Positions 28,530-45,971 of a stretch of 64,000 nucleotides of DNA are shown piece by piece. The first letter of the stretch is position 1, and each line of letters starts with the position of its first letter. The stretch lies in the IMG/VR virus record IMGVR_UViG_3300047560_000921, positions 62,001 through 126,000 of that record; one strand, 5' to 3'. A model generated the notes under the pieces. That model was given only the letters and a program-made list of their open reading frames with translations, searched no databases and was not told where the DNA came from. A program made the translations under genes and the position numbers.

Positions 28530-28530
28530 A

Positions 28531-29577
28531 GTGTCAGATTTTATCCAAGGTCAAATAATAACAGCGGCTCAGTGGAATGAGCTAGCTCAGGCCGTGAATA
28601 AAATCTGGGGTGACGATATGGCCGGCGGCGGCCCAACCGCTGATCCGGTACTTAAAGAAGCATTAAAGTATGGCTGGGGACAAAGTCCGTTGGCCCAACA
28701 AGCAGTAGCAGGTAATACTATTGATCATACATTATGGAATAGTACAATTGATATTGTTAACATTTCTGCACATAATACAGGCGCCCTGGCATTAGGAACG
28801 AACTTAGCTAGAACAGCAACAGGACAAAAGATTACAGCAGCACAAGCTCAAGTGCTTAACGTCCTTAACTCACTAGTCGATGCAAATCGCAATAATTTAG
28901 TAGCGGCAAGAAAACAATTTGCCACACTAGGAACTAACTCTAGAACTGCTCCATGGAAAAATAAAATTTCCGCTGAAGTACATTATCAATTTGGTAGCTT
29001 TGACAACGCACGTTATTTCTTTAATAGTGGCGGACAGTTACGACTACATATGACGGCTAGCGGCGGATCAACCCGCGGATACCAGTCATGGCAACAAGTA
29101 TACGGAAAGCTAGGTACATTTGTTTTAGATATCAACTCTTGCACTAACACCGGCACTTATGCTGTAAGTGAAAGCAAAGGCTTCTACGAATTGTCGGCCA
29201 CAGAAACATTACTAATGACAGCTACCAGTTCGGGTAGCGGCAGTGGGTATGGCGGCTACGGCGGCTACGGCGGCTATGGGGGATACGGCTGTTATGGCGG
29301 CTACGGTGGCTACGGCGGCTATGGCGGCTACGGCGGATACGGAAGCTACTGTACATTCAGATTGAAAGTATACGGAAGATTGGTTGACAACGGCACAGTT
29401 GCTATTAGATTTGAAATGGATAGTACTGCATTTAGGATCAATGTTGACGGCACACATGTATTAACCGCCAACGTATTATATGCGGCCCCAGATACATACG
29501 GTGATGCACAATTCAATATTCCAGCTCCAAATTATTATTTGGCAGATGGATTTGACACAGCCGGCTTAGACAACTAA
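28531..29577 (+). CDS. Virion/tail-associated protein with a Gly-Tyr-Gly tract
   Basis: G..ITAAQWN collar-like repeats and ARYFFNSGG motif; GYG tract near the C-terminus. Confidence 0.65.
   Translation: MSDFIQGQIITAAQWNELAQAVNKIWGDDMAGGGPTADPVLKEALKYGWGQSPLAQQAVAGNTIDHTLWNSTIDIVNISAHNTGALALGTNLARTATGQKITAAQAQVLNVLNSLVDANRNNLVAARKQFATLGTNSRTAPWKNKISAEVHYQFGSFDNARYFFNSGGQLRLHMTASGGSTRGYQSWQQVYGKLGTFVLDINSCTNTGTYAVSESKGFYELSATETLLMTATSSGSGSGYGGYGGYGGYGGYGCYGGYGGYGGYGGYGGYGSYCTFRLKVYGRLVDNGTVAIRFEMDSTAFRINVDGTHVLTANVLYAAPDTYGDAQFNIPAPNYYLADGFDTAGLDN
29245..29352 (+). repeat. 9-bp tandem coding repeat: (GYG)5-CYG-(GYG)5-SYC
   Basis: ggc-tay-ggn units with synonymous variation; 12 Tyr in 36 codons. 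Confidence 0.95.
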
Positions 29578-29625
29578 AATAATTGCGATAAATAACTGCG
29601 TACTTAATACACAGAGAGAATCGCA

Positions 29626-29979
29626 ATGGATAAACGTCTTCAGGAAGCGTTAGACTTTAGTAACTATAGACTAACGCTATCTAATCAAAAAAACAATCTT
29701 AAACAACGAGCAGAAGTTCAAAAGCTCGTAAACCACAATAATGGAATCTTCACAGCTCGTGTAGAACAAATGGGCTACATAAGCTATTTGATTTCCAGCG
29801 GCGCAGAGCAACAGGTGTTCATGGACAACAACGATATACCTGTGCTAGTTAAAGACTTGCCTGTATTTTTAGAAAAACTTAACAGTGCATACACTATGGC
29901 TATGAATGAGTTCTTTGTGGAAAACGAAAAGCTCAAGCGCCTGCGTAATGTAAAAAGTTTGGTTAACTTAAATGAGTAA
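29626..29979 (+). CDS. Hypothetical protein, possibly a tail-fibre chaperone-like helical protein
   Basis: First gene after TAAATA at 29589; coupled to the glycosyltransferase block. Confidence 0.5.
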   Translation: MDKRLQEALDFSNYRLTLSNQKNNLKQRAEVQKLVNHNNGIFTARVEQMGYISYLISSGAEQQVFMDNNDIPVLVKDLPVFLEKLNSAYTMAMNEFFVENEKLKRLRNVKSLVNLNE

Positions 29980-30856
29980 CGGTGTAGTTCTTTTTGCCTA
30001 CACTAACGATACTATCGATTACACTAAACTAGCTGTAATGACAGCGTTGTCTGTAAAGGCAAATTTAAAAAACAATAATGTAGCATTGCTAACAGATGTA
30101 AAAACACAGGATCATTTGTTGGCAACACATCCTGCTGATTTGATTAGATATTGCTTCGACAAAATTATAGTCGAAGATTTAACACACGATGAGAATACTC
30201 GTGTACACAACGACAGTCCGTGGCATTCTTTTAGAACACAGTTTAGCAACGGTAACAAACATAACGTTTACAATTTGAGTCCATGGGATAAGAGTTTACT
30301 AATAGACGTTGATTACATTGTAAACAGTAACGCACTAGACAGTCTGTTTGATTCTGATTATGAACTTGCACTGTTCAGAAATGCAAGAGGCTTACGATGG
30401 GAATTACCACACCACGAAGAACAACGTTTACATCCTGACGGAATCGACATGTGGTGGAGCACAGTTGTATATTGGCAACGTAGTGAACCTAGTACACAGT
30501 TCTTTAATATGTGGCACCATGTTAAAGAGAACTACGACTATTACAAGTTCCTTTATAAGTTCCCTGGTAAGATGTTTAGAACAGATTATGCGTCCAGCAT
30601 AGCCATACATTTGTTAAACGGACAGCGAGAAGGTAACTGGGTTAAAGAAATTCCGCCTGGCACCATGCGTTACATGGATCAAAAAGATGAAATGGTAAGC
30701 ATCAACGGCAAGAATGATTTTACTTTCCTCAGTAACTTCCATCATGAACCATGGCGAAATTTGCCAGTGAGGCTAGTCAATGAAGATATCCATATGATGA
30801 ACAAGCTGGCGTTACTAAGGCACTATGATAAGTTTGTAAAGGAATACTATGTCTAA
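29972..30856 (+). CDS. Glycosyltransferase-like (GT-A fold)
   Basis: GVVLFA..Y.KLA...ALS, SPWDKSLLIDVDY (DxD), C-terminal HMMNK. Confidence 0.65.
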   Translation: MSNGVVLFAYTNDTIDYTKLAVMTALSVKANLKNNNVALLTDVKTQDHLLATHPADLIRYCFDKIIVEDLTHDENTRVHNDSPWHSFRTQFSNGNKHNVYNLSPWDKSLLIDVDYIVNSNALDSLFDSDYELALFRNARGLRWELPHHEEQRLHPDGIDMWWSTVVYWQRSEPSTQFFNMWHHVKENYDYYKFLYKFPGKMFRTDYASSIAIHLLNGQREGNWVKEIPPGTMRYMDQKDEMVSINGKNDFTFLSNFHHEPWRNLPVRLVNEDIHMMNKLALLRHYDKFVKEYYV

Positions 30857-31664
30857 GGGAATTATAACTTATGCAAACAATGAGCAGTACATCAAGCAAG
30901 CGGTAATACTAGCAGTAACAGCACGTAAAAATAGTAACTTGCCGGTATCGCTAGTCGTTCCTGAATCCGTAGTAGTTGACGATTCATTTAGAAACTACTT
31001 TGATACAGTAATTTCGCTAGAGCTTAGTGTTGGGCCTGACAGGGGCTTATTAGATACTTTGACTAATAGTCCTTACGAAAATACACTGTTCTTGTATAGT
31101 GACTCTTTAGTATTGTCTGATATTAATGATATCTATGCACAGCTAGACTTTTATGACATTGTCATGAATGATCAGTTGCTCGACTTTAAAGGCAGCAACA
31201 TTACTAGACAGTTATATGAGCAACGTAAAATTATAGTCAAGAACAATTTAACTGATGTATGGAGCAATGCTATCTTGTATAAGAAAACGGATAACTTGTT
31301 GGAATGGACCAAGTTGGCACACCGCATTATTACATTTTGGCAATTTTTCAGGGATCAACACTTAACTGAGTACGGTATAGACGATAAGCTACGTTTAAAG
31401 TTTAACACTGCATTATGTCTAGCTATGAAATTAGCAGACACTACTGTGGCCCGAGGATTTCCGCTTACAACATTATCCATGCAAGAAGAAAACACTGCAA
31501 GTTTAGCATGGGCCAACTTGGACTGGTTTGTATTTTTAAATGCATGGATATTAGACAACGGGCAAGTTAAAGTTGAAAACTATGTTCAGTCAGGAATACT
31601 TCATTACGGCAAGAGTTGGATGAACGATGATATTTACAATAGACTACTAAAAGTATATGCATGA
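30849..31664 (+). CDS. Glycosyltransferase-like paralog with degenerate DxD
   Basis: KGIITYA..YIKQA..LA, SPYENTLFLYSDS, LHY.K; collinear with 29972..30856. Confidence 0.55.
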   Translation: MSKGIITYANNEQYIKQAVILAVTARKNSNLPVSLVVPESVVVDDSFRNYFDTVISLELSVGPDRGLLDTLTNSPYENTLFLYSDSLVLSDINDIYAQLDFYDIVMNDQLLDFKGSNITRQLYEQRKIIVKNNLTDVWSNAILYKKTDNLLEWTKLAHRIITFWQFFRDQHLTEYGIDDKLRLKFNTALCLAMKLADTTVARGFPLTTLSMQEENTASLAWANLDWFVFLNAWILDNGQVKVENYVQSGILHYGKSWMNDDIYNRLLKVYA

Positions 31665-32640
31665 TAGTTTAAAACAATTTGCAGAATTTTTTGAAGTAGT
31701 CAAACAGCCGCCGGTACAGTACTACGTTTACTACAATCCAGAAAACGGGTCGATAGATAAAATACAAACACATCAGCAAGCCACCGGTGAGTATATAGTG
31801 TTAGATGACGCAAACAGTTATATACAAAGTATCCTAACTGCGAAGTCTAGTGAAAACGATTACATTGTTGCATTTGACAAGGAACAAGATACAAAAGGTC
31901 TTTTTAAGAAAGACACTTTCCTTAGAAAGCTACATTCTAATAATGACAACCTGTATGGTATACCGTTCAAAGCTGAAGCAGACTTTAAAGATCAAATCAA
32001 TTTAAATTTTCATCTGAGTACACAACGACTGGAAATAGCAGTCAATAGGTCAGCGTTGGAAAACTTATTAAAGGCAGTACACACTGAAAAGATACATTTG
32101 CAGACTTCTGAAAAGATTGTGTTTTATATAACTGACAAATACGATCCAAACCTTATACACGATACGATTGTTTGCGACCCAGATGCATTATTAAATAGTA
32201 GACTAAATTTTAAGTTAGATTGGCTAACAGAAGAAAAGCTAAACAGAATAATAATTTGGACAAAGCGTTTCTTCCATTCGTATTCTTGGAGTTGGCAGGC
32301 AGTTCAATATGTTACCCCAGTGGCCAACGGCGACATATACAGCATCAATAATGGACATTGTTCCGCATCACCTGACTGCCACTTACGGTTGCAATTTACT
32401 AACAATGGTGTTATTATTACTAGTAACCTTAAAGATCCTGCCAACGTTAAATTTTATGATGAACTGGCATGCCATGTTATAAAAGGCAATGACCCTAGTC
32501 AGTACTATGGTACGTTTAGTATACCTCCTGATAAAGTTGCTAACGGCCAAACATACACAATCGATTATGTAAAGCCAATAGATGACTTAGGCATTATTTT
32601 TAATAACACGAATATACGATTACACTGGACAACAGAATGA
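31657..32640 (+). CDS. Hypothetical protein
   Basis: 327-aa ORF translationally coupled within the GT block; two IT/IK..DP repeats. Confidence 0.6.
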   Translation: MHDSLKQFAEFFEVVKQPPVQYYVYYNPENGSIDKIQTHQQATGEYIVLDDANSYIQSILTAKSSENDYIVAFDKEQDTKGLFKKDTFLRKLHSNNDNLYGIPFKAEADFKDQINLNFHLSTQRLEIAVNRSALENLLKAVHTEKIHLQTSEKIVFYITDKYDPNLIHDTIVCDPDALLNSRLNFKLDWLTEEKLNRIIIWTKRFFHSYSWSWQAVQYVTPVANGDIYSINNGHCSASPDCHLRLQFTNNGVIITSNLKDPANVKFYDELACHVIKGNDPSQYYGTFSIPPDKVANGQTYTIDYVKPIDDLGIIFNNTNIRLHWTTE

Positions 32641-33620
32641 TAGTACCTATTACAGAATTTGATGTAGTTTTTATGAGCTACGATGAACCCAATGCAGATG
32701 AAAACTATGCAGACTTGCTAACTAAAATTCCATGGGCACTACGAAGCCACGGTGTTAAAGGTAGCGATGCTTGCCATAAGGCCGCGGCCGCGCTATGCTC
32801 TACAGACAGATTCATTACTATTGACGCTGATAACATTGTTAGAGAAGATTTCATGAACATTCAGATTGACATTAACAAAATTGACCGCAGTGATGTTATT
32901 AGCTGGGCTGGTAAGAATGTAGTTAACGGTTTAGTCTACGGCAACGGTGGGATTAAGTGCTGGCCAAGACATGTGGTAGAGCAAATGAAAAGCCATGAAG
33001 CATCGGATACACCCGAAAGCCAAGTTGATTTTTGCTGGAACATTAATTACATTCAAATGAATAATGTGTATAGCGATGTGCTTAATAACGCAACTCCCTA
33101 TCAGGCATATCGTGCAGGATTCCGTGAAGGTGTAAAGCTAGGATTGGAGCGTGGCGTAACAGTTGATCCTAGAAAATTTAAACAAGCAGTTCACTATAAA
33201 AATTATCAACGTTTGCTAGTATGGGCTAGTGTTGGAGCAGATGTACCCAATGGCGAATGGGCAGTATATGGTACTCGTCTTGGATGTTACTTGACTAACA
33301 TGAAACGAGATGAGTTTGATTTTGTCAATGTCAGAGACTTTGAGTGGCATGACGAATTTTGGGCCAAAGAAGTTGCACCTAAATTCTCTGGCAATGGCAA
33401 AACTTGTCCTCGTAGCGGATACAGCTGGGACCCGCAAGCATTACAACAGGAAACATTAAGACTGGGTGTAATATTAAAACAAGAATTAGGACTAGAGTTA
33501 GCAGACTTAGACGCCGAAGCAAGCAAATTCTTTAAAGCAACCTATGTAAACCCTAATAGGCTCGGACCAATGATTCGAGAGGACTCAGTACTCAAGGGAG
33601 TGGGATCAGACAATGAGTGA
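32637..33620 (+). CDS. Glycosyltransferase-like (GT-A), family B copy 1
   Basis: FDVVFMSYDEPNA, HGVKG..HKAAA, IDAD, NGLVYGNGG.K, GFREGVKL. Confidence 0.7.
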   Translation: MIVPITEFDVVFMSYDEPNADENYADLLTKIPWALRSHGVKGSDACHKAAAALCSTDRFITIDADNIVREDFMNIQIDINKIDRSDVISWAGKNVVNGLVYGNGGIKCWPRHVVEQMKSHEASDTPESQVDFCWNINYIQMNNVYSDVLNNATPYQAYRAGFREGVKLGLERGVTVDPRKFKQAVHYKNYQRLLVWASVGADVPNGEWAVYGTRLGCYLTNMKRDEFDFVNVRDFEWHDEFWAKEVAPKFSGNGKTCPRSGYSWDPQALQQETLRLGVILKQELGLELADLDAEASKFFKATYVNPNRLGPMIREDSVLKGVGSDNE

Positions 33621-35025
33621 TTATAGTTACTTTAATCAAAGATTAGGACACATTAAACAGGTTATCGATAATGTAAGTCCTAGCTTCTGTGCGGCTAAAT
33701 GGACGCAAGTAACTATTCATTTACAAACAGGAATGACGCATAGTTGCCACCATCCTATGCAACATAAGATTCCGTTAGAAGAAATTAAATCTAATCCTAG
33801 CGCCCTGCACAATACTGCGTACAAAAAGAACCAACGTGCTCAAATGTTAAACGGCGAGCGGCCACGTGAGTGTGACTATTGCTGGAGAGTGGAAGATACA
33901 GAAGGTACTCACTTTAGCGACAGGATATTAAAGACTGCCGAAGAGTGGAGCTACCCATACATGCATAAGATTGTCAATGCACCGTGGGACGATAACACTA
34001 TACCAAGCTATGTTGAAGTTAGTTTTGGTAACGGTTGTAATTTTAAATGTGCATATTGCAGTCCTGATATTAGTAGCAAGTGGATGGAGGAGTCCACTAA
34101 GTATGGCCCGTACAATTTGGAACATACTGTATTCAATAACGTTGAGCGTCTTAAAGAGCTGGATAGAATGCCTATACCTGACAGAGAAGACAATCCTTAT
34201 GTAGATGCCTGGTGGGCTTGGTGGCCAGAGTTGTATCCTAACTTACACACATTCCGTATTACGGGCGGTGAGCCACTGATGAATAAAAATACATTTAGGA
34301 CATTGGATTACATAGAAGCTAATCCTAACCCTAATTTGAATTTTGCAATTAACACTAACTTGTGTTTGCCTGACAGCATCATCGATAAGACTATTGCTCA
34401 ATTGAATAGGATTACTTCTAATAAGGCTGTAAAGAAACTACACATCTATACTAGTGCTGACACTTATGGTCCACATGCAGAGTACATTCGCAATGGCATG
34501 GATTATAGACAGTGGTACAAGAACATGCAACGCATTATCAAAGAATGTCCGGATGTAAGCGTTACAATTATGGTTACGTTTAACGTAATGAGCTTGCCTA
34601 TGTTTAAGTATTTCTTAGAAGATGTGGCAGCAATTAAGAACGATACAACAATTTTACGCACAGAAGAACGTAAGCATCCGTTGTACGTAGACTTTCCATA
34701 TTTAAGACATCCTGAGTTTTTAAGTAGTTTGATTGCTAGTGATAGTATGAAGGCCAGCTTTAACGAATGTGTGGATTACATTAAAGAAAACTTAGGGCAC
34801 GGTCACAAGCACCCGGATCACTTTGGGTTCTATCAGCATGAGCTACATGCCGCAGAGCGTATACAGCATTTGTTAGCCAATCATAAACTAAGTGAAGAAC
34901 AATTAAAAAAGAATCGTAGAAGTTTTGCATTGTTTATTGAAGAGCATGACAAGCGCCGCGGCACAAACTTTAAGGTAACGTTCCCAGAGCTTATCCCATT
35001 CCTTAAGGAGTGTAGAAATGCTTGA
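33613..35025 (+). CDS. Radical SAM protein with N-terminal twitch/SPASM-like domain
   Basis: CNFKCAYC, TGGEP, N-terminal C..KW...SC...CDYCW. Confidence 0.9.
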   Translation: MSDYSYFNQRLGHIKQVIDNVSPSFCAAKWTQVTIHLQTGMTHSCHHPMQHKIPLEEIKSNPSALHNTAYKKNQRAQMLNGERPRECDYCWRVEDTEGTHFSDRILKTAEEWSYPYMHKIVNAPWDDNTIPSYVEVSFGNGCNFKCAYCSPDISSKWMEESTKYGPYNLEHTVFNNVERLKELDRMPIPDREDNPYVDAWWAWWPELYPNLHTFRITGGEPLMNKNTFRTLDYIEANPNPNLNFAINTNLCLPDSIIDKTIAQLNRITSNKAVKKLHIYTSADTYGPHAEYIRNGMDYRQWYKNMQRIIKECPDVSVTIMVTFNVMSLPMFKYFLEDVAAIKNDTTILRTEERKHPLYVDFPYLRHPEFLSSLIASDSMKASFNECVDYIKENLGHGHKHPDHFGFYQHELHAAERIQHLLANHKLSEEQLKKNRRSFALFIEEHDKRRGTNFKVTFPELIPFLKECRNA

Positions 35026-35725
35026 TGTTATCTTCTTAAGCTACAACGAACAATATGCAGACCGTAACTATGAACGTCTGCTAGAAATTGCTCCACATGC
35101 AAAGCGAGTACACGGTGTTAAGGGTATATTAAACGCACACCAAGCTGCCGCACGTAAGAGCATGACTAACAACTTTTACATCGTTGATGCAGATGCGTAT
35201 ATAGTTGACGAGTTTGATTTTAGTTACACACCTACACAAAAGGAATTGATATACGGAAGAATCCCGTCAACTGATTGTGTATTCTGCTGGGCAAGCAAAA
35301 ATCCAATCAATGGATTAGAATACGGCTACGGCGGCGTTAAGTTGTTCCGTAAAGATTTATTGTTAGCTGTCACTGACTGGAGAGTTGACTTAGCAACCAG
35401 CATGGGTGCAGAGTTTGTTAGCAAGCCCGAAGTAAGTAACATCACGGCATTTAACACAGACGCTTATAGTACTTGGCGTAGTGCGTTTAGAGAATGTACT
35501 AAACTGGCTAGCGGTATAATTAGTGATGATGCTGTTACTGCTAGTAGACTCGATACGTGGTGCTCAGTAGGAGCAGACGCTCAATGTGGATCGTATGCTA
35601 TTGCAGGTGCAATAGCAGGCAAAGACTACGGAACTTTGAATAAAGATAACGTAGAAGCACTTAAATTAATTAACGACTTTGATTGGTTATATGATAGATT
35701 TAAACAACATTACCCAAACGTCTAA
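35018..35725 (+). CDS. Glycosyltransferase-like (GT-A), family B copy 2
   Basis: DVIFLSYNE, HGVKGI..AH.AAA, VDAD, NGLEYGYGGVKLF, AFRECTKL, INDFDWL. Confidence 0.7.
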   Translation: MLDVIFLSYNEQYADRNYERLLEIAPHAKRVHGVKGILNAHQAAARKSMTNNFYIVDADAYIVDEFDFSYTPTQKELIYGRIPSTDCVFCWASKNPINGLEYGYGGVKLFRKDLLLAVTDWRVDLATSMGAEFVSKPEVSNITAFNTDAYSTWRSAFRECTKLASGIISDDAVTASRLDTWCSVGADAQCGSYAIAGAIAGKDYGTLNKDNVEALKLINDFDWLYDRFKQHYPNV

Positions 35726-37775
35726 GTTCAATGTAATATTTGTTAATCAGCCGTACACAGACATAGAGCTAGCCGAAATGTGTAATGGCAAAACAACATG
35801 GTTTGTTAACGGTGAAATACAAGACGCAGAAGTATTTGACGGATTTGACTGGGGGTTCACACCAGTGGGCTACGAGTCAAAAAACTTGCACATGTGGGTA
35901 TGGCCAGACAGGAGCTTTTGGTTAGCTAAATTGATTCCTGCCAGATGGGACCTAGGTTATGTGCAATATATTACCGAACCAAAACGTAGAGTTACAGTTA
36001 GTACATATTACAACGGTGATGCACAATCTATGCTAGAGTATTTGCCGCCTACATACGATTTGAAATACGAACATGTTTGGTTATTTGACGTTACAACAAC
36101 AGACGGCAATGACATAGAGGCAGTTAGAATATCTTATGTTTCCGAGCCACAAGGCTTAAAAATCGTAGATAAAACTACAAAAAATGTCTTTAATTTAGTT
36201 AAAAATCCTGCCCTGCCTGACAGGGCATACGTAGGCATAGACACCAGCAACAAATTCCACTATAGTCAAGGAAAGTATAGACATGTATGGAACTTGGGCG
36301 GAGATGTTACCCTGCCTAATTATGACGTATGGGCTTATAGTTTAGAACCTGCTACATTTGTGGGTACAGTAGTAGAAGGCAAATTGGAAGTAACTGATTT
36401 TTACAAAGATATGACATGGGAAGTCAATCCGTTATTTGAAAATATTAAGTTTGCCGATTTCAATTTTGACTACAAGCCCTTGGCAGACAAAATGAATCTA
36501 GTACATACGTGGTACCTAGACTCTAGCTACACACCTCCAGGCGAACGTATATGGGCAGTTAGATTAACTCCTACTAACAGTTGCATGGGAGAGCTGGACA
36601 TGGGCCAACTTAGTTTAAACTTAACACCTAAAGTCATAGTGAACCCAGACTTCCAGTTGTATGATTGGAACAACGTTGTTAGCAAGTTCACACCCAGCTA
36701 CGATAGTTTGCAGTTTTTACATGTATGGTATTGCGAAGGAACAGATAAGAAGTACGGCGTTAAGATATCCTTTACAGATACAACAACAGGATACAAAGAG
36801 CATGGCTATGCTCGCCCATTTATGACAGAATGGAGCATGGGCCCGGGCGACACCAAACTGTATTGGCATTTTGATAAAGACTGTTACCCTGTTCCGCAGT
36901 GGAACAGAAAGTTTATGCCAGCTAGAGGTAATGAGTCTAAGGTGCATGTGTTTACGATGACTAATCCCAAGACTGGCCGTGTAACAGATTGGACAGGATG
37001 TTACCTTGTACCTAACGGTGTAGTACTTACAGACAAACTACGTAAGTCAGCAGTTAAGTGCTTTGAGCATGGCTGCACCGAGCAAGAGTTTGATATTGTG
37101 TTTTTAAGCAATGGCGAACCATATGCAGACGCAAACTTTGCCAAGCTAGAAAAGTTAGTACATGATAAGTCTAAGCTACACAGGGTAGATAGAGTTAAAG
37201 GTATCCTGGAAGCACACAAGGCCGCCGCCGATATTGTTACTACGGAAATGTTTTACCTAGTAGATGCAGACTGCGTCATTGAGGGTAGCTTTGCATTTGA
37301 CTTATATCCTAAATCCCATGACCGGGACACTGTATATGTTTGGCATGTACGTAACCCTGTCAACGGTTTAACATATGGATATGGTGGCGTAAAATTATTC
37401 CCCACACAGTTATTAAGAGACACTAAAGAATGGAAAATAGACTTAGCTACAAGCATTGGGGCAAAGTTTAAAGTATTGCCTAGAACAATAGGCTCTACAG
37501 AGTTTAACTGCGATCCGGAAACAGCATGGCGTAGTGGATTTAGAGAAGCAGCTAAACTTGCCAGCAAGATTATTAAAAATCAAGTTGATGCAGAAACAGA
37601 TCGTCGACTTGAAACATGGTGTACAGTTGATTTAGGTGTACCCAACGGAGAACATGCTATGCAAGGAGCACAGTGTGGCCGCACATGGGCACAAAACCAT
37701 CCTAGTTTAATTGATAAAATTAACGACTTCGAATGGTTACACAAACAATGGTTAAATTATGTTACTACAGAGTAA
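35691..37775 (+). CDS. Repeat-containing protein with C-terminal family B glycosyltransferase domain (start uncertain)
   Basis: C-terminal FDIVFLS.GEP, VDAD, NGLTYGYGGVKLF, GFRE..KL, INDFEWL; N-terminal H[VMT]W repeats. Confidence 0.7.
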   Translation: MIDLNNITQTSKFNVIFVNQPYTDIELAEMCNGKTTWFVNGEIQDAEVFDGFDWGFTPVGYESKNLHMWVWPDRSFWLAKLIPARWDLGYVQYITEPKRRVTVSTYYNGDAQSMLEYLPPTYDLKYEHVWLFDVTTTDGNDIEAVRISYVSEPQGLKIVDKTTKNVFNLVKNPALPDRAYVGIDTSNKFHYSQGKYRHVWNLGGDVTLPNYDVWAYSLEPATFVGTVVEGKLEVTDFYKDMTWEVNPLFENIKFADFNFDYKPLADKMNLVHTWYLDSSYTPPGERIWAVRLTPTNSCMGELDMGQLSLNLTPKVIVNPDFQLYDWNNVVSKFTPSYDSLQFLHVWYCEGTDKKYGVKISFTDTTTGYKEHGYARPFMTEWSMGPGDTKLYWHFDKDCYPVPQWNRKFMPARGNESKVHVFTMTNPKTGRVTDWTGCYLVPNGVVLTDKLRKSAVKCFEHGCTEQEFDIVFLSNGEPYADANFAKLEKLVHDKSKLHRVDRVKGILEAHKAAADIVTTEMFYLVDADCVIEGSFAFDLYPKSHDRDTVYVWHVRNPVNGLTYGYGGVKLFPTQLLRDTKEWKIDLATSIGAKFKVLPRTIGSTEFNCDPETAWRSGFREAAKLASKIIKNQVDAETDRRLETWCTVDLGVPNGEHAMQGAQCGRTWAQNHPSLIDKINDFEWLHKQWLNYVTTE

Positions 37776-38583
37776 AGACTTATTATACGGACTAGACGAG
37801 TACATTACAGTACAAACAAATCCTAAGTTGTTCAGAGCAATCTACAACTACATACATCATAAAAGTACAGAAAACAGGAATGCTATAGCAGATGGCGTTC
37901 CGTACATGTTACGCACTAAAACTTTAGCGACCTTGGATAGACTTGATAACAATGATACAGACGTAGACGTACTAATTGATTTGTTTTTAACTTGTCATGC
38001 AGTTGATGCAAAGTTTATTAGTAACCTGCGTACAGCAGTAAAAGAATTTCCAGAAGTTAATTGGCGCGATGGCCTGAGCAGATTCCAAATGCAAAGTAAG
38101 GTATGGGCCGCAAACATCTTAAAGAGCTATGACTTGGGTAATGTATATTTGTGTGGCGGCTGGATAGGGACACTAGCCCGTGTAATATTTGATGTATCTA
38201 AGTCAACTGCTACTATTACTAGCTTTGACATAGACGATGTTGCCAATAAAGCTAGCATGATACTAAATCTAGAATTAGCTAGTTCGGGTAAGTATGCGGC
38301 AGTAAATCAAGACATATACACTTTAGATTACACAGTTCCTGACACAGTAGTAAACACTATCTGTGAACATGTACCAGACTTCCAGCGCTGGCTGGATATG
38401 ATTCCTAGCGGCAAGTTAGTGTTATTGCAAACAAACAATATGTTTGAAATGACAGACCATGTAAATTGTGTAGAAACTTTAGAAGAATTTAAAACGCAAT
38501 GCCAGGACGTTGACATTGCGTATTCGAATACAATCAGTTATGCTGGGTGGCACAGATTTATGATTGTTGGAGTTAAACGTTAA
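37759..38583 (+). CDS. Class I SAM-dependent methyltransferase-like
   Basis: LCGGWIG (motif I-like), SFDID, NTICEH, RFMIVG. Confidence 0.6.
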   Translation: MLLQSKDLLYGLDEYITVQTNPKLFRAIYNYIHHKSTENRNAIADGVPYMLRTKTLATLDRLDNNDTDVDVLIDLFLTCHAVDAKFISNLRTAVKEFPEVNWRDGLSRFQMQSKVWAANILKSYDLGNVYLCGGWIGTLARVIFDVSKSTATITSFDIDDVANKASMILNLELASSGKYAAVNQDIYTLDYTVPDTVVNTICEHVPDFQRWLDMIPSGKLVLLQTNNMFEMTDHVNCVETLEEFKTQCQDVDIAYSNTISYAGWHRFMIVGVKR

Positions 38584-38888
38584 CCAATGTAAACGTCAAA
38601 CTGGCAGTTGTTAGTAGTACACCACTCGTCCATTAACATACCGCGTTGAATCATCAAGTCTTCGTTAACGTTAACAAAGTCTCGCAGGTCGTTGTCATTT
38701 GTAAACTCTAAAGTAACTGTACTAGTTAACCTATCCTCGCTTACTTCAACTCGTGTACCTACGAACCCGTCGTGCTCCATGGCCCGATTACGCATCTGTT
38801 CCATAATGGGATGATCCCTGTATTCTGCGAAAAAGAACTCAACATCTGGACTAGGTCTTTTCATAATAGTAATGATTTTAATGCTCAT
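38580..38888 (-). CDS. Small hypothetical protein (possible ferredoxin-like/ABM-like fold)
   Basis: AGGAG RBS and its own TAAATA at 38907-38912. Confidence 0.65.
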   Translation of the reverse strand: MSIKIITIMKRPSPDVEFFFAEYRDHPIMEQMRNRAMEHDGFVGTRVEVSEDRLTSTVTLEFTNDNDLRDFVNVNEDLMIQRGMLMDEWCTTNNCQFDVYIG

Positions 38889-38909
38889 TGCTGTCTCCTA
38901 ATGTGTTAT

Positions 38910-39536
38910 TTAGTTTATCAAATGTTCGGCATCTTTTAAGACGGATACTTCGGGATCGTGTTCGGACTTTAGTGTGTAGCTTTTTATAATAACTGGGGTA
39001 GGATTTCTGCCCTCTAGAATCCCTAAAATATTACTGCCGAATTCATACTTTGCCCTGCTATACGGTGGTACGATTTCTACAATTTTTACATCGTATAAAT
39101 GATTTCTACTTTCGGGCCCAAGTCGATGTATACCTTTTACTGTACTTTTTGTGTGCTGGTAGTCTCTTGCCATGTAGCATACCTTCCGTCCAAAGTTATT
39201 TGCACTGTCCAGGAATACTGGAGTTAGAAACTCGTTAATTACATGCAAGTTTTCTTTTAGCATAGAAAACTTATGCCTGTCGGCAAACACATTGCCTATA
39301 GTAGCGTAAGGCATACTAGACCAATGAGACCTGGTAACAAACATAGACATTTCTTCCTGCTCATTAAACCAACCCCATGCGCTATGTCCCAGCTCATTAT
39401 TAGCACTGATGTTAAATGATTTTCTAAAGTATTGGTCAATAGCAGTAGTAATCTTAACTTTCATGTTAGACCCGTGCGCTTGATATATTTCAAGCATACG
39501 TGGCAAGTCGGCACTAGTGAGTTTGCGTACACTCAT
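38910..39536 (-). CDS. GNAT-like protein, paralog A
   Basis: VRKLTSADL..MLEI start; collinear with 43558..44175. Confidence 0.5.
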   Translation of the reverse strand: MSVRKLTSADLPRMLEIYQAHGSNMKVKITTAIDQYFRKSFNISANNELGHSAWGWFNEQEEMSMFVTRSHWSSMPYATIGNVFADRHKFSMLKENLHVINEFLTPVFLDSANNFGRKVCYMARDYQHTKSTVKGIHRLGPESRNHLYDVKIVEIVPPYSRAKYEFGSNILGILEGRNPTPVIIKSYTLKSEHDPEVSVLKDAEHLIN

Positions 39537-40603
39537 AGATAGTCGGTGATGTTAATATTGTCAACAAATTCAAACTTGTCAGTAATAAAGTTATGGACAC
39601 GGCGATATCTAAACACACCTGGCAAGCTAGGGAATTTAGTCTTACGTGCAAGATAGTCTTCGTCTTTAGACAATTTGTAAATTAGTTCTTTAGCAGGGAA
39701 TTTGTAACTAACCCATGTATCTTTGATTTTACTATTGGGATTGTTCAAACTCCATTGTTGCCATTCTTCGCCTGCCCAAAAGTGACATACATGCCTATCC
39801 ATCCATGCATCGTCAATATTCTGCGAATCGTTCTTGTGACTTAAAATACGGAACTCTACTGCCTGCCACTTCATTGCAAAGTTCTGATACCACAAGTAGT
39901 CACTCCATGTTTTAATTTCCCAGGGGCAGTTTTTAATGAGCAGTTCCATTTGATCCAAGAACCACTTAGTGCGCTCTTCGTTACCAATCCTGGCATTAAA
40001 GAAATCAAAGGCAAACACTTTATAGTTGCTGTTGATTACAGATTCTGTGCCAAAGAAGTCGATGCTAGACTTTAATGTTAAGCTACCAAATACGTTATCT
40101 GCAAACTCACCAGTGATAACATAGTTGAAGCTGTTGAAGTAATTCTCAAAGCTATTGGAACTTTCTGTCTTGTAGTTACGCTTAATAACAGTTTCGTACA
40201 AGGTAGGATTTTCCTGTATACTATTGCTGTTTAAGATAATTAGCAATCGTTCTTTGAATTCTTTACTAGCATAGGTATGCATTATGTTTACAATTAGCGT
40301 ACTATCGATGCCCCCGCTATACATAATAACAGGTCTTAGATGTGTAGTCCTAACGTGTTGTTCAATCTTTTGCCATGTTAAGTAACATAGTTCTTCGAAC
40401 GTGTGCGTAAACGTTCTTACTTGAGGCATGGGATGCCTGTTAACTAGGTTAACAGGAAACTTAATAGTATTAGTTCTATCTACTAAGCTGATGCCACTGT
40501 TAAATGCTTTACTGAATACACTGTACTTGTCTAAAGCAGGGTATTGTTTACACCATTCTGGCTTGTATAAATCTAACTGGTTGTAATAAAGTAGTGCGCT
40601 CAT
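39533..40603 (-). CDS. Asparagine-synthetase C-terminal-like adenylating enzyme (no glutaminase domain)
   Basis: MYSGGIDST PP-loop and ITGEFADNVFG (AsnB GEGADE.FG motif); K..AK..I motif. Confidence 0.75.
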   Translation of the reverse strand: MSALLYYNQLDLYKPEWCKQYPALDKYSVFSKAFNSGISLVDRTNTIKFPVNLVNRHPMPQVRTFTHTFEELCYLTWQKIEQHVRTTHLRPVIMYSGGIDSTLIVNIMHTYASKEFKERLLIILNSNSIQENPTLYETVIKRNYKTESSNSFENYFNSFNYVITGEFADNVFGSLTLKSSIDFFGTESVINSNYKVFAFDFFNARIGNEERTKWFLDQMELLIKNCPWEIKTWSDYLWYQNFAMKWQAVEFRILSHKNDSQNIDDAWMDRHVCHFWAGEEWQQWSLNNPNSKIKDTWVSYKFPAKELIYKLSKDEDYLARKTKFPSLPGVFRYRRVHNFITDKFEFVDNINITDYL

Positions 40604-41220
40604 AGTAAAATATTCAAAAATGTCTCTTTGTGTAAGTTATCCATAACTTGTTTAACTTCGTTGGCAGTAGTTGCAGCCTTTAACAGTCTTAGGTATTTGA
40701 TTCTAAACCATTCAGTCTTTGTCATCATTTCCAAGTGCATGGTATACTGTAAAATGATTTGGTCAGCCGCTTGCTCTGCGGTGCAGTTGTCTAGCTCTGC
40801 ATAGTCTAATACTAATTGTACATTACTCAAGCCGACTAAGTTTGCATCATAGCCGTGTGTCCTGAGTAGTACAGCCTGGTCGTATTTCATTTTGTATACT
40901 TCGTCTTGGCCGGCACATACTTCTATTTCCTTAACTCTAGCTAGATTAATCTTAGTAAGGATATCATAGTAGCTCCATTGCTTGTACTCGACGAACTTGC
41001 GATATTCGTCGATGTTTTCGCCCGGACTGTATACTATTTTAGATCCACGTAAAATAAAATCACTAGGGTTAGATTTAAATTGCTGTTCTAGTGACTTATC
41101 TAAGTCTCCTGTATATACGTGCGTATCAAAGAAACATTCGTTAACAAAATATAAATGTTTCTTCTCTGGTGTAGAAAGCAAAACCCGATTAAGGCTGTTA
41201 GTTAATATGTGTACCCACAT
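40600..41220 (-). CDS. Hypothetical helical protein, weakly like tail-fibre assembly proteins
   Basis: GQDEVY..KY.QA...YA......EQAADQI...R......AATT.NEV pattern. Confidence 0.45.
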   Translation of the reverse strand: MWVHILTNSLNRVLLSTPEKKHLYFVNECFFDTHVYTGDLDKSLEQQFKSNPSDFILRGSKIVYSPGENIDEYRKFVEYKQWSYYDILTKINLARVKEIEVCAGQDEVYKMKYDQAVLLRTHGYDANLVGLSNVQLVLDYAELDNCTAEQAADQIILQYTMHLEMMTKTEWFRIKYLRLLKAATTANEVKQVMDNLHKETFLNILL

Positions 41221-41231
41221 GTCTGTCTCTC

Positions 41232-42779
41232 TTATAAATTTAAAAGTCTGTTTTTATAAAGCTGGAACCATTCTGCTTTTTTGTCTTTAAGGAAGTCTGC
41301 ACTAACGTTTTTAACGCTCACGCCTGCTAAGTCGTCGGCAGTAAGTCCAGTACCGTTCATCCACATAAACTGGAAGAACCCTGCAGGCTTAATACGACCG
41401 CTACGATATCCGCGCATAATATATTCGTCTGCAATAGCCCATGCCTTAGGTAAAGTCATATGCGGATTGCTCCACATGCTCCATCTAAAGAAGCTGTTGT
41501 TAGCAACACCTTTGTTGACGATGTTATATCCGTAAGATTCGGGATCAGCTTCGAACTTGCTAGGCCAGATTTTCTTTTCGTTAATGTTGAAGCCCAAAGG
41601 TTCAACTGTATATCCGTCTAGTGGACAGTTTTCGTCTTCGACCCACTTCATCCATTCGCGGAATGTTTCTTCCGTTTCGTGCGGCAAGCCTACAATAAAC
41701 CCACTGCTCATTGTAATGTCTTTGCCCCATGCTTCGTCTCGCAACCAGTGTAATAGTTCTTTGCTTTTCTCTGGGTGCAGTCCTTTGCCAATGGCTAACG
41801 CACTCTTATGGTTTAAACTTTCTAATCCAAATACACAGGTTTTAAGTCCGCTTTCTTTTAGCAGGGGTGCCATGTCCCTATTAGCATGGATTAAATCATG
41901 TCTTAGGTATGCACTAAACTGTATCTTAAAAGGAAGTTGTGAAAAGACTTCGTTGTATAGCTTTTCTACTTTATAGATGCTGTCGTTGTATGTATCGTCT
42001 GCAAAGATATAGTTAGTAATGCCCCACTTTTCGTAGTTACGAATGAACTCTTCTTTTAACGGCGCACTATCCTTGATGTAGTCGAACTTGTCTTTGCCGT
42101 TCATAGGAAAACTACAAAAGTCGCATCTAAAGATACATCCACGACTAATTTCAATGGGCAACACTTCGTTTTCGTAGATTAAGTCATTGTCTTCCCATAG
42201 TACTTGACTGGTTTGAAAATTCCACTCAGGGTCTTTAATCCAATCGACTTCAACTTGATGCTCGTTGATAGGAACCATTTTAAGTACAGTTTCGTCGTAA
42301 GGCTTACCTGCCAAGAAGTTAGCGTACTCTACTGTAGTATGGTCAGCATAGCCATGAATGAAGCAGTCTACTAGTTTACTGTTCTTGTATTGGCTACGTT
42401 GCCCGCCTAGTACAATTTTTGTCTTGGGATTTACTTGTTTGATATGATTAATAAACGCATAACTGACTTCAGGCTTAAACGGAAAGTCTTCAGTATATCT
42501 TAATTCGCGCCTATAGTGGTTAGGCCTACTTTTATCGCTTAGTGCTTGGTCTCTGATAGCATACAAGGTGCTACTGAATCCAACGAATAATGTGTTAGGA
42601 CCTACAAACTTGTCTACAATTTGTTTAAGCTCGTCCAAGCTCCATTCGGTTAAGTAGTCGACAACTTGTACTGTATAACCGTTCTTTCTTAATTCCGTAG
42701 CAATGCGATAAGCACCTAGTAGGCGCTGAAAAACCGTAGTGCTAGTGAACTCCGTAAAAATTACAATGTCTGCTGTCAT
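41232..42779 (-). CDS. Cobalamin-binding-domain radical SAM enzyme
   Basis: LGAYRIAT.LR.NGY.VQVVD, VGFS, IVLGG (B12 domain); EISRGCIFRCDFC; FADDT; FGLES; FIVGLPHET. Confidence 0.9.
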   Translation of the reverse strand: MTADIVIFTEFTSTTVFQRLLGAYRIATELRKNGYTVQVVDYLTEWSLDELKQIVDKFVGPNTLFVGFSSTLYAIRDQALSDKSRPNHYRRELRYTEDFPFKPEVSYAFINHIKQVNPKTKIVLGGQRSQYKNSKLVDCFIHGYADHTTVEYANFLAGKPYDETVLKMVPINEHQVEVDWIKDPEWNFQTSQVLWEDNDLIYENEVLPIEISRGCIFRCDFCSFPMNGKDKFDYIKDSAPLKEEFIRNYEKWGITNYIFADDTYNDSIYKVEKLYNEVFSQLPFKIQFSAYLRHDLIHANRDMAPLLKESGLKTCVFGLESLNHKSALAIGKGLHPEKSKELLHWLRDEAWGKDITMSSGFIVGLPHETEETFREWMKWVEDENCPLDGYTVEPLGFNINEKKIWPSKFEADPESYGYNIVNKGVANNSFFRWSMWSNPHMTLPKAWAIADEYIMRGYRSGRIKPAGFFQFMWMNGTGLTADDLAGVSVKNVSADFLKDKKAEWFQLYKNRLLNL

Positions 42780-43546
42780 TAAAGTCTTTTAAGTATAGGT
42801 AAGAAAATCATACACGGATCTAGTTCCCACCATTTTTCACCGAAGTTATAGTTAGCAGGATGCTTGTGATGGTTATTGTGCCAACCTTGTCCCCAAGCAA
42901 AGTATCCTAATAGCGGCACGTTGCGGCTATTATCGTCGATTTCATGATTCCTATATCCAAAGCCTTTAAGGTGGCAGAATAAGTTGATGCAAGCCTCTTG
43001 GTGTATGCCAGTAATCATGGGCAACAAGATTAAGCCAACTGCAAGTTGCCAGTTGAGTAATGCTGTAGCAATGATGATACCCCATACTATCTTATAGTAG
43101 TTAGTATGTACCCATACTTGGAATTTGTCACGTAATAAGTCTACGGCATATTTCAAGTTAACATCGGTTGGTGCAATTTTCCAACTCCAGCTAAGGTAAG
43201 CATGGAACTTGCCATGAATAGGACTGTGTATGTCTCTTGGTTTGTCAGAATGACTATGATGATATCCTCTGTGTAAAGCTACCCAGAAAATAGGACTGCC
43301 TTGTCCAGCCATGCATCCAAGTATAGTAATAACTTTTCTTGTAAACGCACTCATCTCTGGAATACACTTGTGACTAAGCACACGGTGTAATCCAATGGCA
43401 CTACCTAAACCACTAATTAAAACCCAGCCAACGGGCCAAAACCATAGGTACGACAAATCGCCCCATAGTACTAGTGCTGTTGCACCTAGCAAGGCCGCTA
43501 AGTGTACAGGCCAAAATAATTTAATGCTGTGTCCGGTAGTTTTCAT
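42779..43546 (-). CDS. Membrane acyl (delta-9-type) desaturase
   Basis: Three His boxes HRVLSH, HRGYHH, WHNNHH; DIHSP; hydrophobic segments. Confidence 0.9.
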   Translation of the reverse strand: MKTTGHSIKLFWPVHLAALLGATALVLWGDLSYLWFWPVGWVLISGLGSAIGLHRVLSHKCIPEMSAFTRKVITILGCMAGQGSPIFWVALHRGYHHSHSDKPRDIHSPIHGKFHAYLSWSWKIAPTDVNLKYAVDLLRDKFQVWVHTNYYKIVWGIIIATALLNWQLAVGLILLPMITGIHQEACINLFCHLKGFGYRNHEIDDNSRNVPLLGYFAWGQGWHNNHHKHPANYNFGEKWWELDPCMIFLPILKRL

Positions 43547-43551
43547 ATGCG

Positions 43552-43557
43552 TATTTA
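43552..43557 (-). promoter_or_regulatory. Late promoter TAAATA 5 nt before the desaturase ATG
   Basis: TAAATA-CGCAT-ATG; same spacing as at 10084 and 14028. Confidence 0.55.
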
Positions 43558-45970: not shown

Positions 45971-45971
45971 A

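What the first reader, a model, noticed from the sequence alone, without database searches (positions are those of the whole stretch)
35691..37100. Glycosyltransferase with about six N-terminal repeats apparently derived from a piece of its own catalytic domain
Seen: units spaced about 60-85 aa apart: FTPVGYESKNLHMW, YLPPTYDLKYEHVW, FHYSQGKYRHVW, YKPLADKMNLVHTW, FTPSYDSLQFLHVW, FMPARGNESKVHVF. They echo the post-DxD segment LYPKSHDRDTVYVW of the C-terminal GT domain. Inference: amplified acceptor-binding subdomains that could act as a ruler or processivity device on a repetitive substrate such as the GYG tract or a growing glycan.
Basis: partly seen in the sequence, partly recalled or inferred. 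Interest (0 to 1): 0.6.

Follow-up and report, generated by a model that had tools for sequence, protein, structure and literature searches.

The report
Phage glycosyltransferase with self-derived repeats
A jumbo-phage sugar-transferring enzyme carries six dead, shortened copies of part of its own catalytic domain in front of the working copy, and relatives in other uncultured phages carry from none to ten such copies.

Summary
Window 35691-37775 (+) encodes a 694-aa protein.

Profile methods detect the repeat. An HMM built only from two distant homologues hits P0001 four times, at 11-35 bits. The best score among 500 shuffles was 7.4.

The six units are of two kinds:
- **A-type (aa ~12-90 and ~385-446):** these match the catalytic domain's own profile. 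Across the family, A-type units against the catalytic segment give hhalign E = 1e-25.
- **B-type (four units, aa 98-380):** these are four-stranded beta modules, modelled at pLDDT 89. Their link to the catalytic domain is weaker (P about 1e-4 to 1e-5, 21-24 columns). It is backed by weak structural matches, almost all to the half of GT-A or nucleotidyltransferase folds that follows the DxD motif.

The C-terminal 229 aa is a GT-A fold domain with an invariant DxD (Z 10-12). It belongs to a very large phage family that has no Pfam model.

Unit number in homologues runs from 0 to 10. The repeats are as conserved as the catalytic domain.

The function is inferred, not shown. I favour non-catalytic modules that bind or position the acceptor, as in B3GLCT. 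The proposed link to the GYG tract is not supported, because that tract is unique to this phage.

The parts
35691..37775 (+). Whole gene, P0001, 694 aa. The ATG at 35691 overlaps the end of the upstream paralogue by 35 nt.
35724..35960 (+). Unit A1 (aa ~12-90). A degenerate mini copy of the catalytic N-half: beta1 (FNVIFV), a helix, the TTWFV strand in place of the DxD strand, F.P...HMW, then FWLAKLIP. It has no DxD.
   Evidence: Pulled in by an iterated HMM that started from the catalytic segment: 15.5 bits at first inclusion, with 0 decoys. The catalytic N-half HMM alone gives 4.1 bits. Secondary structure comes, where pLDDT is only 50-70.
35982..36203 (+). Unit B1 (aa 98-171), a four-stranded beta module carrying the YDLKYEHVW motif.
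   Evidence: 33 bits to the P0009/P0010 repeat HMM; AF2 pLDDT about 90.
36204..36425 (+). Unit B2 (aa 172-245), the most divergent B unit (motif KYRHVW).
   Evidence: 10.9 bits against a shuffle maximum of 7.4; 33 bits on the second iteration.
36426..36641 (+). Unit B3 (aa 246-317), motif NLVHTWYLD ... IWAVRLTP.
   Evidence: 34.6 bits; B3-B4 hhalign P = 1e-5.
36642..36830 (+). Unit B4 (aa 318-380), motif FLHVW.
   Evidence: 16.3 bits.
36843..37028 (+). Unit A2 (aa ~385-446), a copy of the DxD strand through to the GGVKLFP strand. It keeps a vestigial D-K-D, but the second Asp is not conserved in close homologues.
   Evidence: 13.1 bits to catalytic HMM positions 50-107; 26.5 bits at first inclusion in the iterated search; alignment. 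AF2 pLDDT is below 50 here.
37086..37772 (+). Catalytic GT-A fold domain (aa 466-694): an N-terminal Rossmann-like half followed by a family-specific helical C-terminal part.
   Evidence: Every Foldseek PDB hit is a GT-A enzyme. VIA-align gives Z 10-12 over aa 460-606. Paralogues P0002 and P0003 are 45% and 36% identical.
37263..37271 (+). DxD motif (D525-A-D527), invariant across the family.
35018..35725 (+). P0002, a stand-alone paralogue of the catalytic domain (235 aa, no repeats).
33613..35025 (+). Twitch-domain radical SAM protein, a conserved neighbour.
   Evidence: NF033640, 320 bits; present in 56 of 83 related loci.
32637..33620 (+). P0003, a third paralogue of the catalytic domain (327 aa).
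29972..31664 (+). Two glycogenin-like (GT8-like) genes of the same cassette (29972-30856 and 30849-31664).
   Evidence: Profiles against PDB glycogenin: E = 8.5e-8 for the second gene and only 0.054 for the first.

Best explanation
**Shown.** P0001 is a multi-module phage enzyme. Its C-terminal 229 aa is a GT-A fold, DxD-bearing domain that looks like a glycosyltransferase. This domain belongs to a very large phage family with no annotation. The N-terminal 465 aa consists of six tandem modules. Two (A-type) are recognisable shortened copies of the catalytic domain's N-half, running from the DxD strand to the GGVKLFP strand. Four (B-type) are roughly 70-aa four-stranded beta modules. The B-type units share the F.Y.P..D..YEHVW motif and the fold of the same post-DxD segment. 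No module has the conserved DxD together with the C-terminal half of the fold, so all should be catalytically dead. In the family, unit number ranges from 0 to 10 and changes by whole blocks. In P0001's own clade the array is fixed and as conserved as the catalytic domain.

**Inferred.** The dead modules work as non-catalytic accessory domains. They would hold or position the acceptor, or a partner carrying it, relative to the single active site. The inactive N-terminal GT-A copy of human B3GLCT works this way. The enzyme would act within a conserved cassette of five transferase-like genes, a twitch radical SAM enzyme and a Rossmann-like protein, which lies next to tail-fibre-like genes. The most likely job of that cassette is to build a glycan on a virion protein.
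For: **Repeat reality.**

**Origin from the catalytic domain.**
- A catalytic-only HMM hits the N-terminal extensions of P0011 and P0012 at 123-136 bits and P0001 at 21 bits. The shuffle maximum was 9.1.
- Most N-terminal extensions outside P0001's own subfamily match catalytic HMM positions 1-130 or 41-90.
- A-type units against the catalytic segment give hhalign E = 1.2e-25 over 60 columns.
- B-type against A-type gives P = 2.5e-5, and B-type against catalytic gives P = 1.2e-4, both in the same register.
- The B-type HMM hits an A-type unit of P0012 at 17 bits, with 0 of 285 decoys.

**Structure.**
- The repeat array models at pLDDT 88.7 and pTM 0.69, with four strands per unit.
- Of the 24 PDB chains that match single units at Z 2-3, at least 19 are GT-A or NDP-sugar transferase folds by my own reading of the entry titles, aligned over their second half.
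- The catalytic domain gives Z 10-12 to GT-A enzymes.
- The DxD is invariant.

**Selection.** Among six close homologues, identity is 69-78% in the repeat regions and 76% in the catalytic domain, with no change in copy number.

**Copy-number range.** Unit count is 0-10 and tracks extension length at r = 0.95. L008 and L011 are 87% identical but differ by one clean 598-aa block.

**Cassette.**. The same gene order is found next to the tail genes of Ralstonia phage RsoM2USA.

**Precedent.** B3GLCT has an inactive, self-derived GT-A domain that is essential for acceptor binding (PMC13597200).
Against: - No binding or activity data exist for any member of this family.
- The link between B-type units and the catalytic domain rests on 21-24 aligned columns and on structural matches with Z of only 2-3. 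An iterated HMM search started from the catalytic segment never recruited the B units.
- Foldseek found no PDB match for the array. The best E-value was 0.35, to other chains of tandem domains (MCE-domain and cadherin arrays).
- Pfam GT2 scores below its threshold, 13.9 against 23.3 bits. IspD- and MobA-type nucleotidyltransferases score as high structurally as true glycosyltransferases.
- AF2 confidence is low for A1 (50-70) and A2 (below 50).
- The target molecule is unknown. Adjacency to fibre genes is the only pointer to a virion protein.
Confidence: 0.55

Rival explanations
1. The modules are a rigid spacer or scaffold with no ligand binding. They would set the distance between an anchoring point (the N-terminal unit, a partner enzyme or the virion) and the active site, or mediate oligomerisation of the multi-enzyme cassette.
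For: The four-unit array models as one defined elongated body (pTM 0.69). Its only Foldseek neighbours are other arrays of tandem domains, namely MCE-domain and cadherin chains. Unit number varies in whole units across the family, as expected for a length-setting element.
Against: A simple spacer would not need the motif positions conserved at the 69-78% identity seen here. The known precedent for a self-derived dead GT-A domain is acceptor binding. The two readings are not exclusive.
Confidence: 0.25
2. Only the two A-type units derive from the catalytic domain. The four B-type units would then be an unrelated beta-repeat family that merely shares a short aromatic motif (Y.HVW).
For: The iterated HMM from the catalytic segment never recruits B units. 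The B-to-catalytic alignment covers only 21 of 66 columns, at hhalign probability 55%. Structural Z scores are 2-3.
Against: Three independent comparisons (B-catalytic, B-A and the HMM cross-hit on P0012) give the same register. The cross-hit on P0012 unit 1 spans B positions 8-61, well beyond the motif. At least 19 of the 24 best structural matches of single B units belong to one fold class and align over the same half of it. B units sit in exactly the place that A units occupy in sister clades.
Confidence: 0.2
3. One reading: the array is a ruler or processivity clamp matched to the (GYG)n tract of the neighbouring protein at 28531-29577.
For: The tract lies in the same cassette, 6 kb upstream. 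It sits at a site where every homologue keeps one Tyr. Two glycogenin-like (tyrosine-glucosylating family) genes lie between the two.
Against: The tract is present only in this phage. Twenty homologues from 16 loci have none. Their linked transferases still carry extensions ranging from about 0 to 441 aa, with no visible relation to the number or length of that protein.
Confidence: 0.05
4. The enzyme does not act on a virion protein. Its target would be DNA bases or a host envelope polysaccharide or lipid, and the repeats would bind that polymer.
For: Phage glycosyltransferases are best known for modifying DNA and host O-antigen (background summarised in PMC12619734). The opposite strand carries many small-molecule and lipid-type enzymes: a desaturase, TauD, a hydroxylase and a B12-binding radical SAM protein.
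Against: No thymidylate-synthase-like hydroxymethylase or TET/JBP gene was found in the 231 kb held. That record is only about 65% complete, so this is weak evidence. The cassette is syntenic with tail-fibre-like genes in many loci, and with the tail module in RsoM2USA.
Confidence: 0.15

Closest known systems
Human B3GLCT (GT31), a two-domain GT-A enzyme (PMC13597200)
   Same: An extra N-terminal domain that evolved from the enzyme's own catalytic domain. It has lost the DxD and the catalytic base and is truncated at its C-terminus. It serves acceptor recognition.
   Different: B3GLCT has one nearly complete GT-A copy (178 Calpha atoms superpose). P0001 has six much shorter pieces of 60-90 aa, of two kinds, arranged in tandem, and relatives have 0-10. 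No sequence relationship to GT31 was found here.
Polypeptide GalNAc-transferases (GT27) with a C-terminal ricin-type lectin domain
   Same: A GT-A catalytic domain (structural hits) joined to a non-catalytic, internally repeated module that steers the enzyme along repetitive acceptors.
   Different: The lectin domain is an unrelated beta-trefoil, not a derivative of the catalytic domain. No lectin or CBM family was detected in P0001.
Lysyl hydroxylase LH3 (PLOD3), which pairs a GT-A domain with an accessory GT-like domain
   Same: The LH3 GT domain matches the catalytic domain at Z about 10. From my own knowledge, LH3 also carries a second, non-catalytic GT-A-like 'accessory' domain.
   Different: LH3 has a single full-size accessory domain in a multi-enzyme animal protein, with no tandem amplification.
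Mycobacteriophage Che8 virion glycosylation transferases; PBCV-1 A64R capsid glycosyltransferase
   Same: Virus-encoded GT-A enzymes that decorate virion proteins. Che8 Q855A2 (E = 3e-4) and A64R 2p6w (E = 1e-3) are structural hits.
   Different: Both are single-domain enzymes of annotated families with no self-derived repeats. Virion glycosylation is only inferred for the present cassette.
Ralstonia phage RsoM2USA ORF347-350 (all annotated as hypothetical)
   Same: The only isolate among 50,697 phage records with this family. It has the same order: transferase, twitch radical SAM, transferase, transferase. Identity is about 40%.
   Different: Its last transferase is a plain 228-aa protein with no N-terminal array.

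Membership tests
GT-A fold (GT2-like) glycosyltransferase | Rossmann-like GT-A fold | tested here: met
   All Foldseek PDB hits with E <= 1e-3 are GT-A enzymes. VIA-align gives Z 10-12, rmsd about 3 A, over about 140 residues of aa 460-606. Nucleotidyltransferases of the same superfold score similarly.
GT-A fold (GT2-like) glycosyltransferase | DxD metal and nucleotide-sugar motif at the end of the fourth strand | tested here: met
   D525 and D527 are invariant in 8- and 12-sequence alignments.
GT-A fold (GT2-like) glycosyltransferase | Score above the Pfam PF00535 gathering threshold | tested here: not met
   13.9 bits against a cut-off of 23.3, E = 0.054. There is no NCBIfam or PHROG match. 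I therefore file it by fold only, not as a GT2 member.
GT-A fold (GT2-like) glycosyltransferase | Catalytic base after the acceptor loop | tested here: inconclusive
   D584 and the F-R-E triad (aa 617-619) are invariant, but no alignment to a characterised base was made.
GT-A fold (GT2-like) glycosyltransferase | Transfer of a sugar from an NDP-sugar | not testable with these tools
   Needs an enzyme assay.
   with shuffle controls and decoys.
Self-derived inactive GT-A accessory domain (B3GLCT type) | Extra domain homologous to the protein's own catalytic domain | tested here: met
   A-type units: (E = 1.2e-25 at family level). B-type units: moderate support only.
Self-derived inactive GT-A accessory domain (B3GLCT type) | Extra domain is a near-complete GT-A fold | tested here: not met
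   Units cover catalytic HMM positions 1-130 at most, usually 41-90. B units are four-stranded modules of about 70 aa.
Self-derived inactive GT-A accessory domain (B3GLCT type) | Loss of catalytic motifs in the extra domain | tested here: met
   A1 and B1-B4 have no DxD. A2 has D-K-D in P0001, but the second Asp is N or F in close homologues. All units lack the C-terminal half that carries D584 and F-R-E.
Self-derived inactive GT-A accessory domain (B3GLCT type) | Extra domain required for acceptor binding | not testable with these tools
   Needs binding and truncation experiments.
Lectin- or CBM-assisted glycosyltransferase (ppGalNAc-T type) | Recognisable lectin or CBM family in the non-catalytic part | tested here: not met
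   No Pfam family on aa 1-460. No PDB fold match for the array.

The most novel reading that the evidence does not exclude
Serial partial self-duplication of a catalytic domain has produced a new autonomous beta-module family. In these phages the number of modules (0-10) would act as a tunable ruler. It would set where along a fibre, or how far along a growing glycan, the single active site works. Copy-number change would then be a rapid way to re-pattern virion glycosylation.
Probability: 0.12. Interest if true: 0.75.

Novelty: new variant of a known kind. Interest (0 to 1): 0.55.

Why it matters
Three points make this worth following up.

- **Domain evolution.** It would be a clear natural case of a new, independently folding small domain arising from a fragment of an enzyme's own catalytic fold and then being amplified in tandem. 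The only close precedent found here, B3GLCT, has one full-size dead copy.
- **A large unannotated family.** At least 4,376 sequence clusters carry no Pfam model or name, and there are at least 584 loci in IMG/VR. The family can now be read as GT-A fold transferases sitting in a conserved cassette beside fibre genes. That gives a testable entry point to virion glycosylation in uncultured jumbo phages.
- **A natural experiment.** The wide variation in unit number between close relatives offers a ready-made series for asking what non-catalytic modules do for a glycosyltransferase.

Tried and rejected
- **Family scans.** Pfam, PHROGs and NCBIfam scans of P0001, P0002 and P0003 gave nothing above threshold. 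A catalytic-domain profile against PDB sequences gave only a chance hit.
- **Fold search for the array.** Foldseek PDB found no match, best E = 0.35. The ESM Atlas search by shape returned only viral hypothetical proteins plus one nucleotidyltransferase cluster.
- **Iterated HMM from the catalytic segment.** It recruits 185 A-type units with no decoys but never the B units. The B link therefore rests on hhalign, one cross-hit and structure.
- **GYG-tract hypothesis.** Rejected on comparative grounds.
- **DNA-level repeats.** None found, only short motif-coding matches.
- **DNA-modification reading.** No ThyA-like or TET/JBP gene in the 231-kb record. The record is incomplete, and the TET control did not ring in any control genome.
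- **The 274-aa downstream protein.** A profile against PDB gave no hit. Calling it a methyltransferase rests only on a Rossmann-type glycine motif seen by eye.
- **Literature.** Searches found no description of this family or of arrays of truncated transferase copies.
- **Not run.** I skipped the all-against-all representative search. It is costly, carries no annotation, and relatives were already plentiful. I also skipped complex prediction, because I do not claim a specific binding pair.
Full report
**Setting.** The window is bases 62001-126000 of a 231-kb IMG/VR viral contig, estimated about 65% complete, so it is a jumbo phage. The finding lies in one ORF, 35691-37775 on the + strand, giving P0001 of 694 aa. 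The ORF overlaps the end of the upstream gene by 35 nt and sits in a long run of genes on the same strand.

The spacings are 61 to 75 aa. Pairwise alignment of the units is only modestly above shuffles, with z up to 6.8, so I used profiles.
- The word search returned four close homologues (66-88% identity, same length). It also returned distant ones of 669 to 1203 aa whose N-terminal repeats are obvious by eye.
- An HMM built only from the eleven repeats of P0009 and P0010 hits P0001 at aa 116-162, 172-221, 246-311 and 318-378, scoring 33, 10.9, 34.6 and 16.3 bits. The best of 500 shuffles of P0001 scored 7.4.
- With only the six close homologues as profiles, unit-against-unit hhalign gives P = 1e-5 to 3e-4 for four of the six pairs of middle units (B2-B4 gave P = 0.05). 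It gives 0.007 for the last unit against the catalytic N-half.
- There is no repeat at DNA level, so the duplications are old.

**Two kinds of unit.** An HMM built only from catalytic domains scores the N-terminal 465 aa of P0001 at 21 bits, against a shuffle maximum of 9.1.
- Its best hit is aa 388-445, aligned to catalytic positions 50-107. A weaker hit covers aa 28-70.
- An iterated search started from the catalytic segment, with 285 shuffled decoys in the database, recruits these same two regions on the second round, at 15.5 and 26.5 bits. It recruits no decoy in eight rounds and never recruits the four middle units.
- I call the two catalytic-like units A1 (aa ~12-90) and A2 (aa ~385-446), and the four middle units B1 to B4 (aa 98-380).
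- In the AF2 model, A1 has the order strand, helix, strand, then two strands. That corresponds to a cut-down N-half of the catalytic domain, though confidence there is low.

**Family-wide picture.** A scan of IMG/VR with the catalytic-domain alignment found at least 584 relatives, and 80 loci were fetched.
- The ORFs that carry the catalytic domain have N-terminal extensions of 0 to 1300 aa.
- Outside P0001's own subfamily, most extensions match the catalytic HMM, at positions 1-130 or 41-90, from one to six times.
- By eye, the units are about 100 aa long. Each has a beta1-like start, a short helix, the strand that normally ends in DxD (here without it), the F.F.Y...HVF motif and a DGI.L.PK strand.
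- After iteration, unit count runs 1, 2, 3, 4, 5, 6, 9, 10 and tracks extension length at r = 0.95.
- A-type units, taken only from proteins that have no B units, align to the catalytic segment with hhalign probability 99.7% and E = 1.2e-25 over 60 columns.

**Are the B units also derived from the catalytic domain?** The evidence is moderate but consistent.
- hhalign of the B profile against the catalytic profile gives P = 9e-4 to 1.2e-4. Against the A profile it gives P = 2.5e-5.
- The B HMM, before any iteration, hits the first A unit of P0012 at 17 bits over B positions 8-61, with no decoy hit.
- Folded alone, the four-unit array gives a confident model (pLDDT 88.7, pTM 0.69) with four strands per unit.
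- Foldseek finds nothing for the array in the PDB.
- An exhaustive VIA-align search returns 24 chains at Z 2-3 that match single units. By my reading of the entry titles, at least 19 are GT-A glycosyltransferases or NDP-sugar nucleotidyltransferases. They include CesA, EXTL2, GtrB, WrtF, mannosylglycerate synthase, STIV A197, IspD and CobY. They are aligned over the second half of their fold.
- Each Z score is individually insignificant. The enrichment for one fold class is the informative part.
- I put the probability that the B units descend from the catalytic segment at about 0.75 to 0.8.

**The catalytic domain.**
- Aa 466-694 has paralogues in two neighbouring genes, P0002 (45% identity) and P0003 (36%).
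- Pfam gives only a sub-threshold GT2 hit.
- All Foldseek PDB hits for the full model are GT-A enzymes. VIA-align gives Z 10-12 over aa 460-606 to B4GALNT1, Mimivirus R699, STIV A197, the LH3 GT domain and POMGnT1, and also to IspD and MobA.
- The beta1 motif (D-I-V-F-L-S-x-x-E) and the D-A-D motif are invariant. These favour a glycosyltransferase over a nucleotidyltransferase.
- The family is very large and unnamed. At least 4,376 clusters in the length range searched have no Pfam domain and no name other than 'hypothetical'. Only one isolate among 50,697 phage records carries it, Ralstonia phage RsoM2USA.

**Constraint and dynamics.**
- Among the six close homologues, mean identity is 69% (A1), 73% (B array), 78% (A2 and linker) and 76% (catalytic domain). 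There are no unit gains or losses. The array is therefore maintained by selection.
- Elsewhere copy number moves in blocks. L008 (1529 aa, 10 units) and L011 (932 aa, 6 units) are 87% identical over their shared length and differ by one clean 598-aa block. That block is itself two roughly 299-aa super-units that are 52% identical to each other.

**Context.**
- The gene closes a conserved cassette. In order it contains:
  - a fibre-like protein with a near-threshold Peptidase_G2 / intramolecular-chaperone domain, 24.6 bits against a cut-off of 25 (27477-28529);
  - a 348-aa protein (28531-29577);
  - a 117-aa protein;
  - two glycogenin-like genes (profile against PDB glycogenin E = 8.5e-8 and 0.054);
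  - a 327-aa protein;
  - P0003;
  - a twitch radical SAM protein (NF033640, 320 bits);
  - P0002;
  - P0001;
  - a 274-aa Rossmann-like protein.
- Parts of this order recur in most of the 83 loci. They also recur in RsoM2USA ORF347-356, which lie next to a proteomically confirmed virion protein (ORF356) and the tail sheath (ORF359).
- No hydroxymethylase or TET-like gene was found in the contig.
- On this basis I favour glycosylation of a virion protein as the cassette's job. This is inference from gene neighbourhood only.

**The GYG tract.**
- The 348-aa protein carries a 41-residue S/G lead-in plus (GYG)n tract at aa 234-274.
- In an alignment with 20 homologues from 16 loci, the tract is an insertion at a loop where all the others have a single conserved Tyr.
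- Those loci have linked transferases with extensions of anywhere from about 0 to 441 aa, with no visible relation to this protein.
- The repeat array therefore did not evolve to match the tract.
- The tract, next to glycogenin-like genes, is interesting in its own right and is listed under things noticed in passing.

**Mechanism.**
- *Shown:* there is one intact active domain plus six degenerate modules derived from it. They have no conserved catalytic motifs, are conserved in sequence, and vary in number across the family.
- *Inferred:* the modules are non-catalytic accessory domains that bind or position the acceptor or a partner.
- The closest precedent is human B3GLCT. [quoted passage not shown]
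- A pure spacer or scaffold role is the main rival and is not exclusive.

**Verdict.** The functional inference remains open, and its GYG-specific form is disfavoured. The architecture is a new variant of a known principle: a glycosyltransferase with a dead, self-derived accessory domain. Here it is taken much further, to tandem arrays of truncated copies, in a large phage family that has never been described.

Noticed in passing
window 29230-29352 (within the ORF 28531-29577, +): A 41-residue S/G lead-in plus (GYG)n tract with about 11 aromatic or Cys positions. It is inserted exactly where 20 homologues from other phages have one conserved Tyr. Two glycogenin-like (GT8-like) genes lie immediately downstream. 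Tyrosine O-glycosylation of this loop is a testable idea.
   Followed up: partly
window 27477-38583 (+); loci L005-L083; L084 (RsoM2USA ORF347-356): A conserved cassette recurs in dozens of uncultured phage contigs and in one isolate. Its order is: fibre-like protein, 348-aa protein, 117-aa protein, two GT8-like genes, two or three GT-A paralogues, twitch radical SAM protein(s), and a 274-aa Rossmann-like protein. Everything in it is annotated as hypothetical.
   Followed up: partly
window 38580-49206 (-): On the opposite strand is a run of modification-type enzymes: two PP-loop ATPase-like proteins, a B12-binding radical SAM protein, a fatty-acid-desaturase-like protein, a TauD-family dioxygenase and an Asp/Arg beta-hydroxylase-like protein. 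Close relatives (L004, L040) share the first few of them.
   Followed up: no
window 17643-26771 (+): A single 3042-aa ORF lies just upstream of the cassette. It has no Pfam family above threshold and is presumably a giant virion or fibre protein.
   Followed up: no
L008:2461-7047 vs L011:4252-7047: Two transferases are 87% identical over their shared length but differ by one clean in-frame 598-aa block (10 units against 6). The block consists of two roughly 299-aa super-units that are 52% identical to each other.
   Followed up: partly
loci L021, L027, L043, L047, L055 and others: Several loci give three or four separate matches to the twitch radical SAM protein beside the transferases. These are either multiple paralogues or split genes; I did not resolve which.
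   Followed up: no
window 35668-35689 and 37718-37739: A 22-nt direct repeat (91% identical) encodes the shared C-terminal I-N-D-F-(D/E)-W-L motif of P0002 and P0001. It is the only notable DNA-level similarity between the paralogues.
   Followed up: no
P0002 family: The stand-alone catalytic-domain family has at least 4,376 clusters at 90% identity with E <= 1e-5. None has a Pfam domain or an informative name, so this is a large gap in current family libraries.
   Followed up: partly
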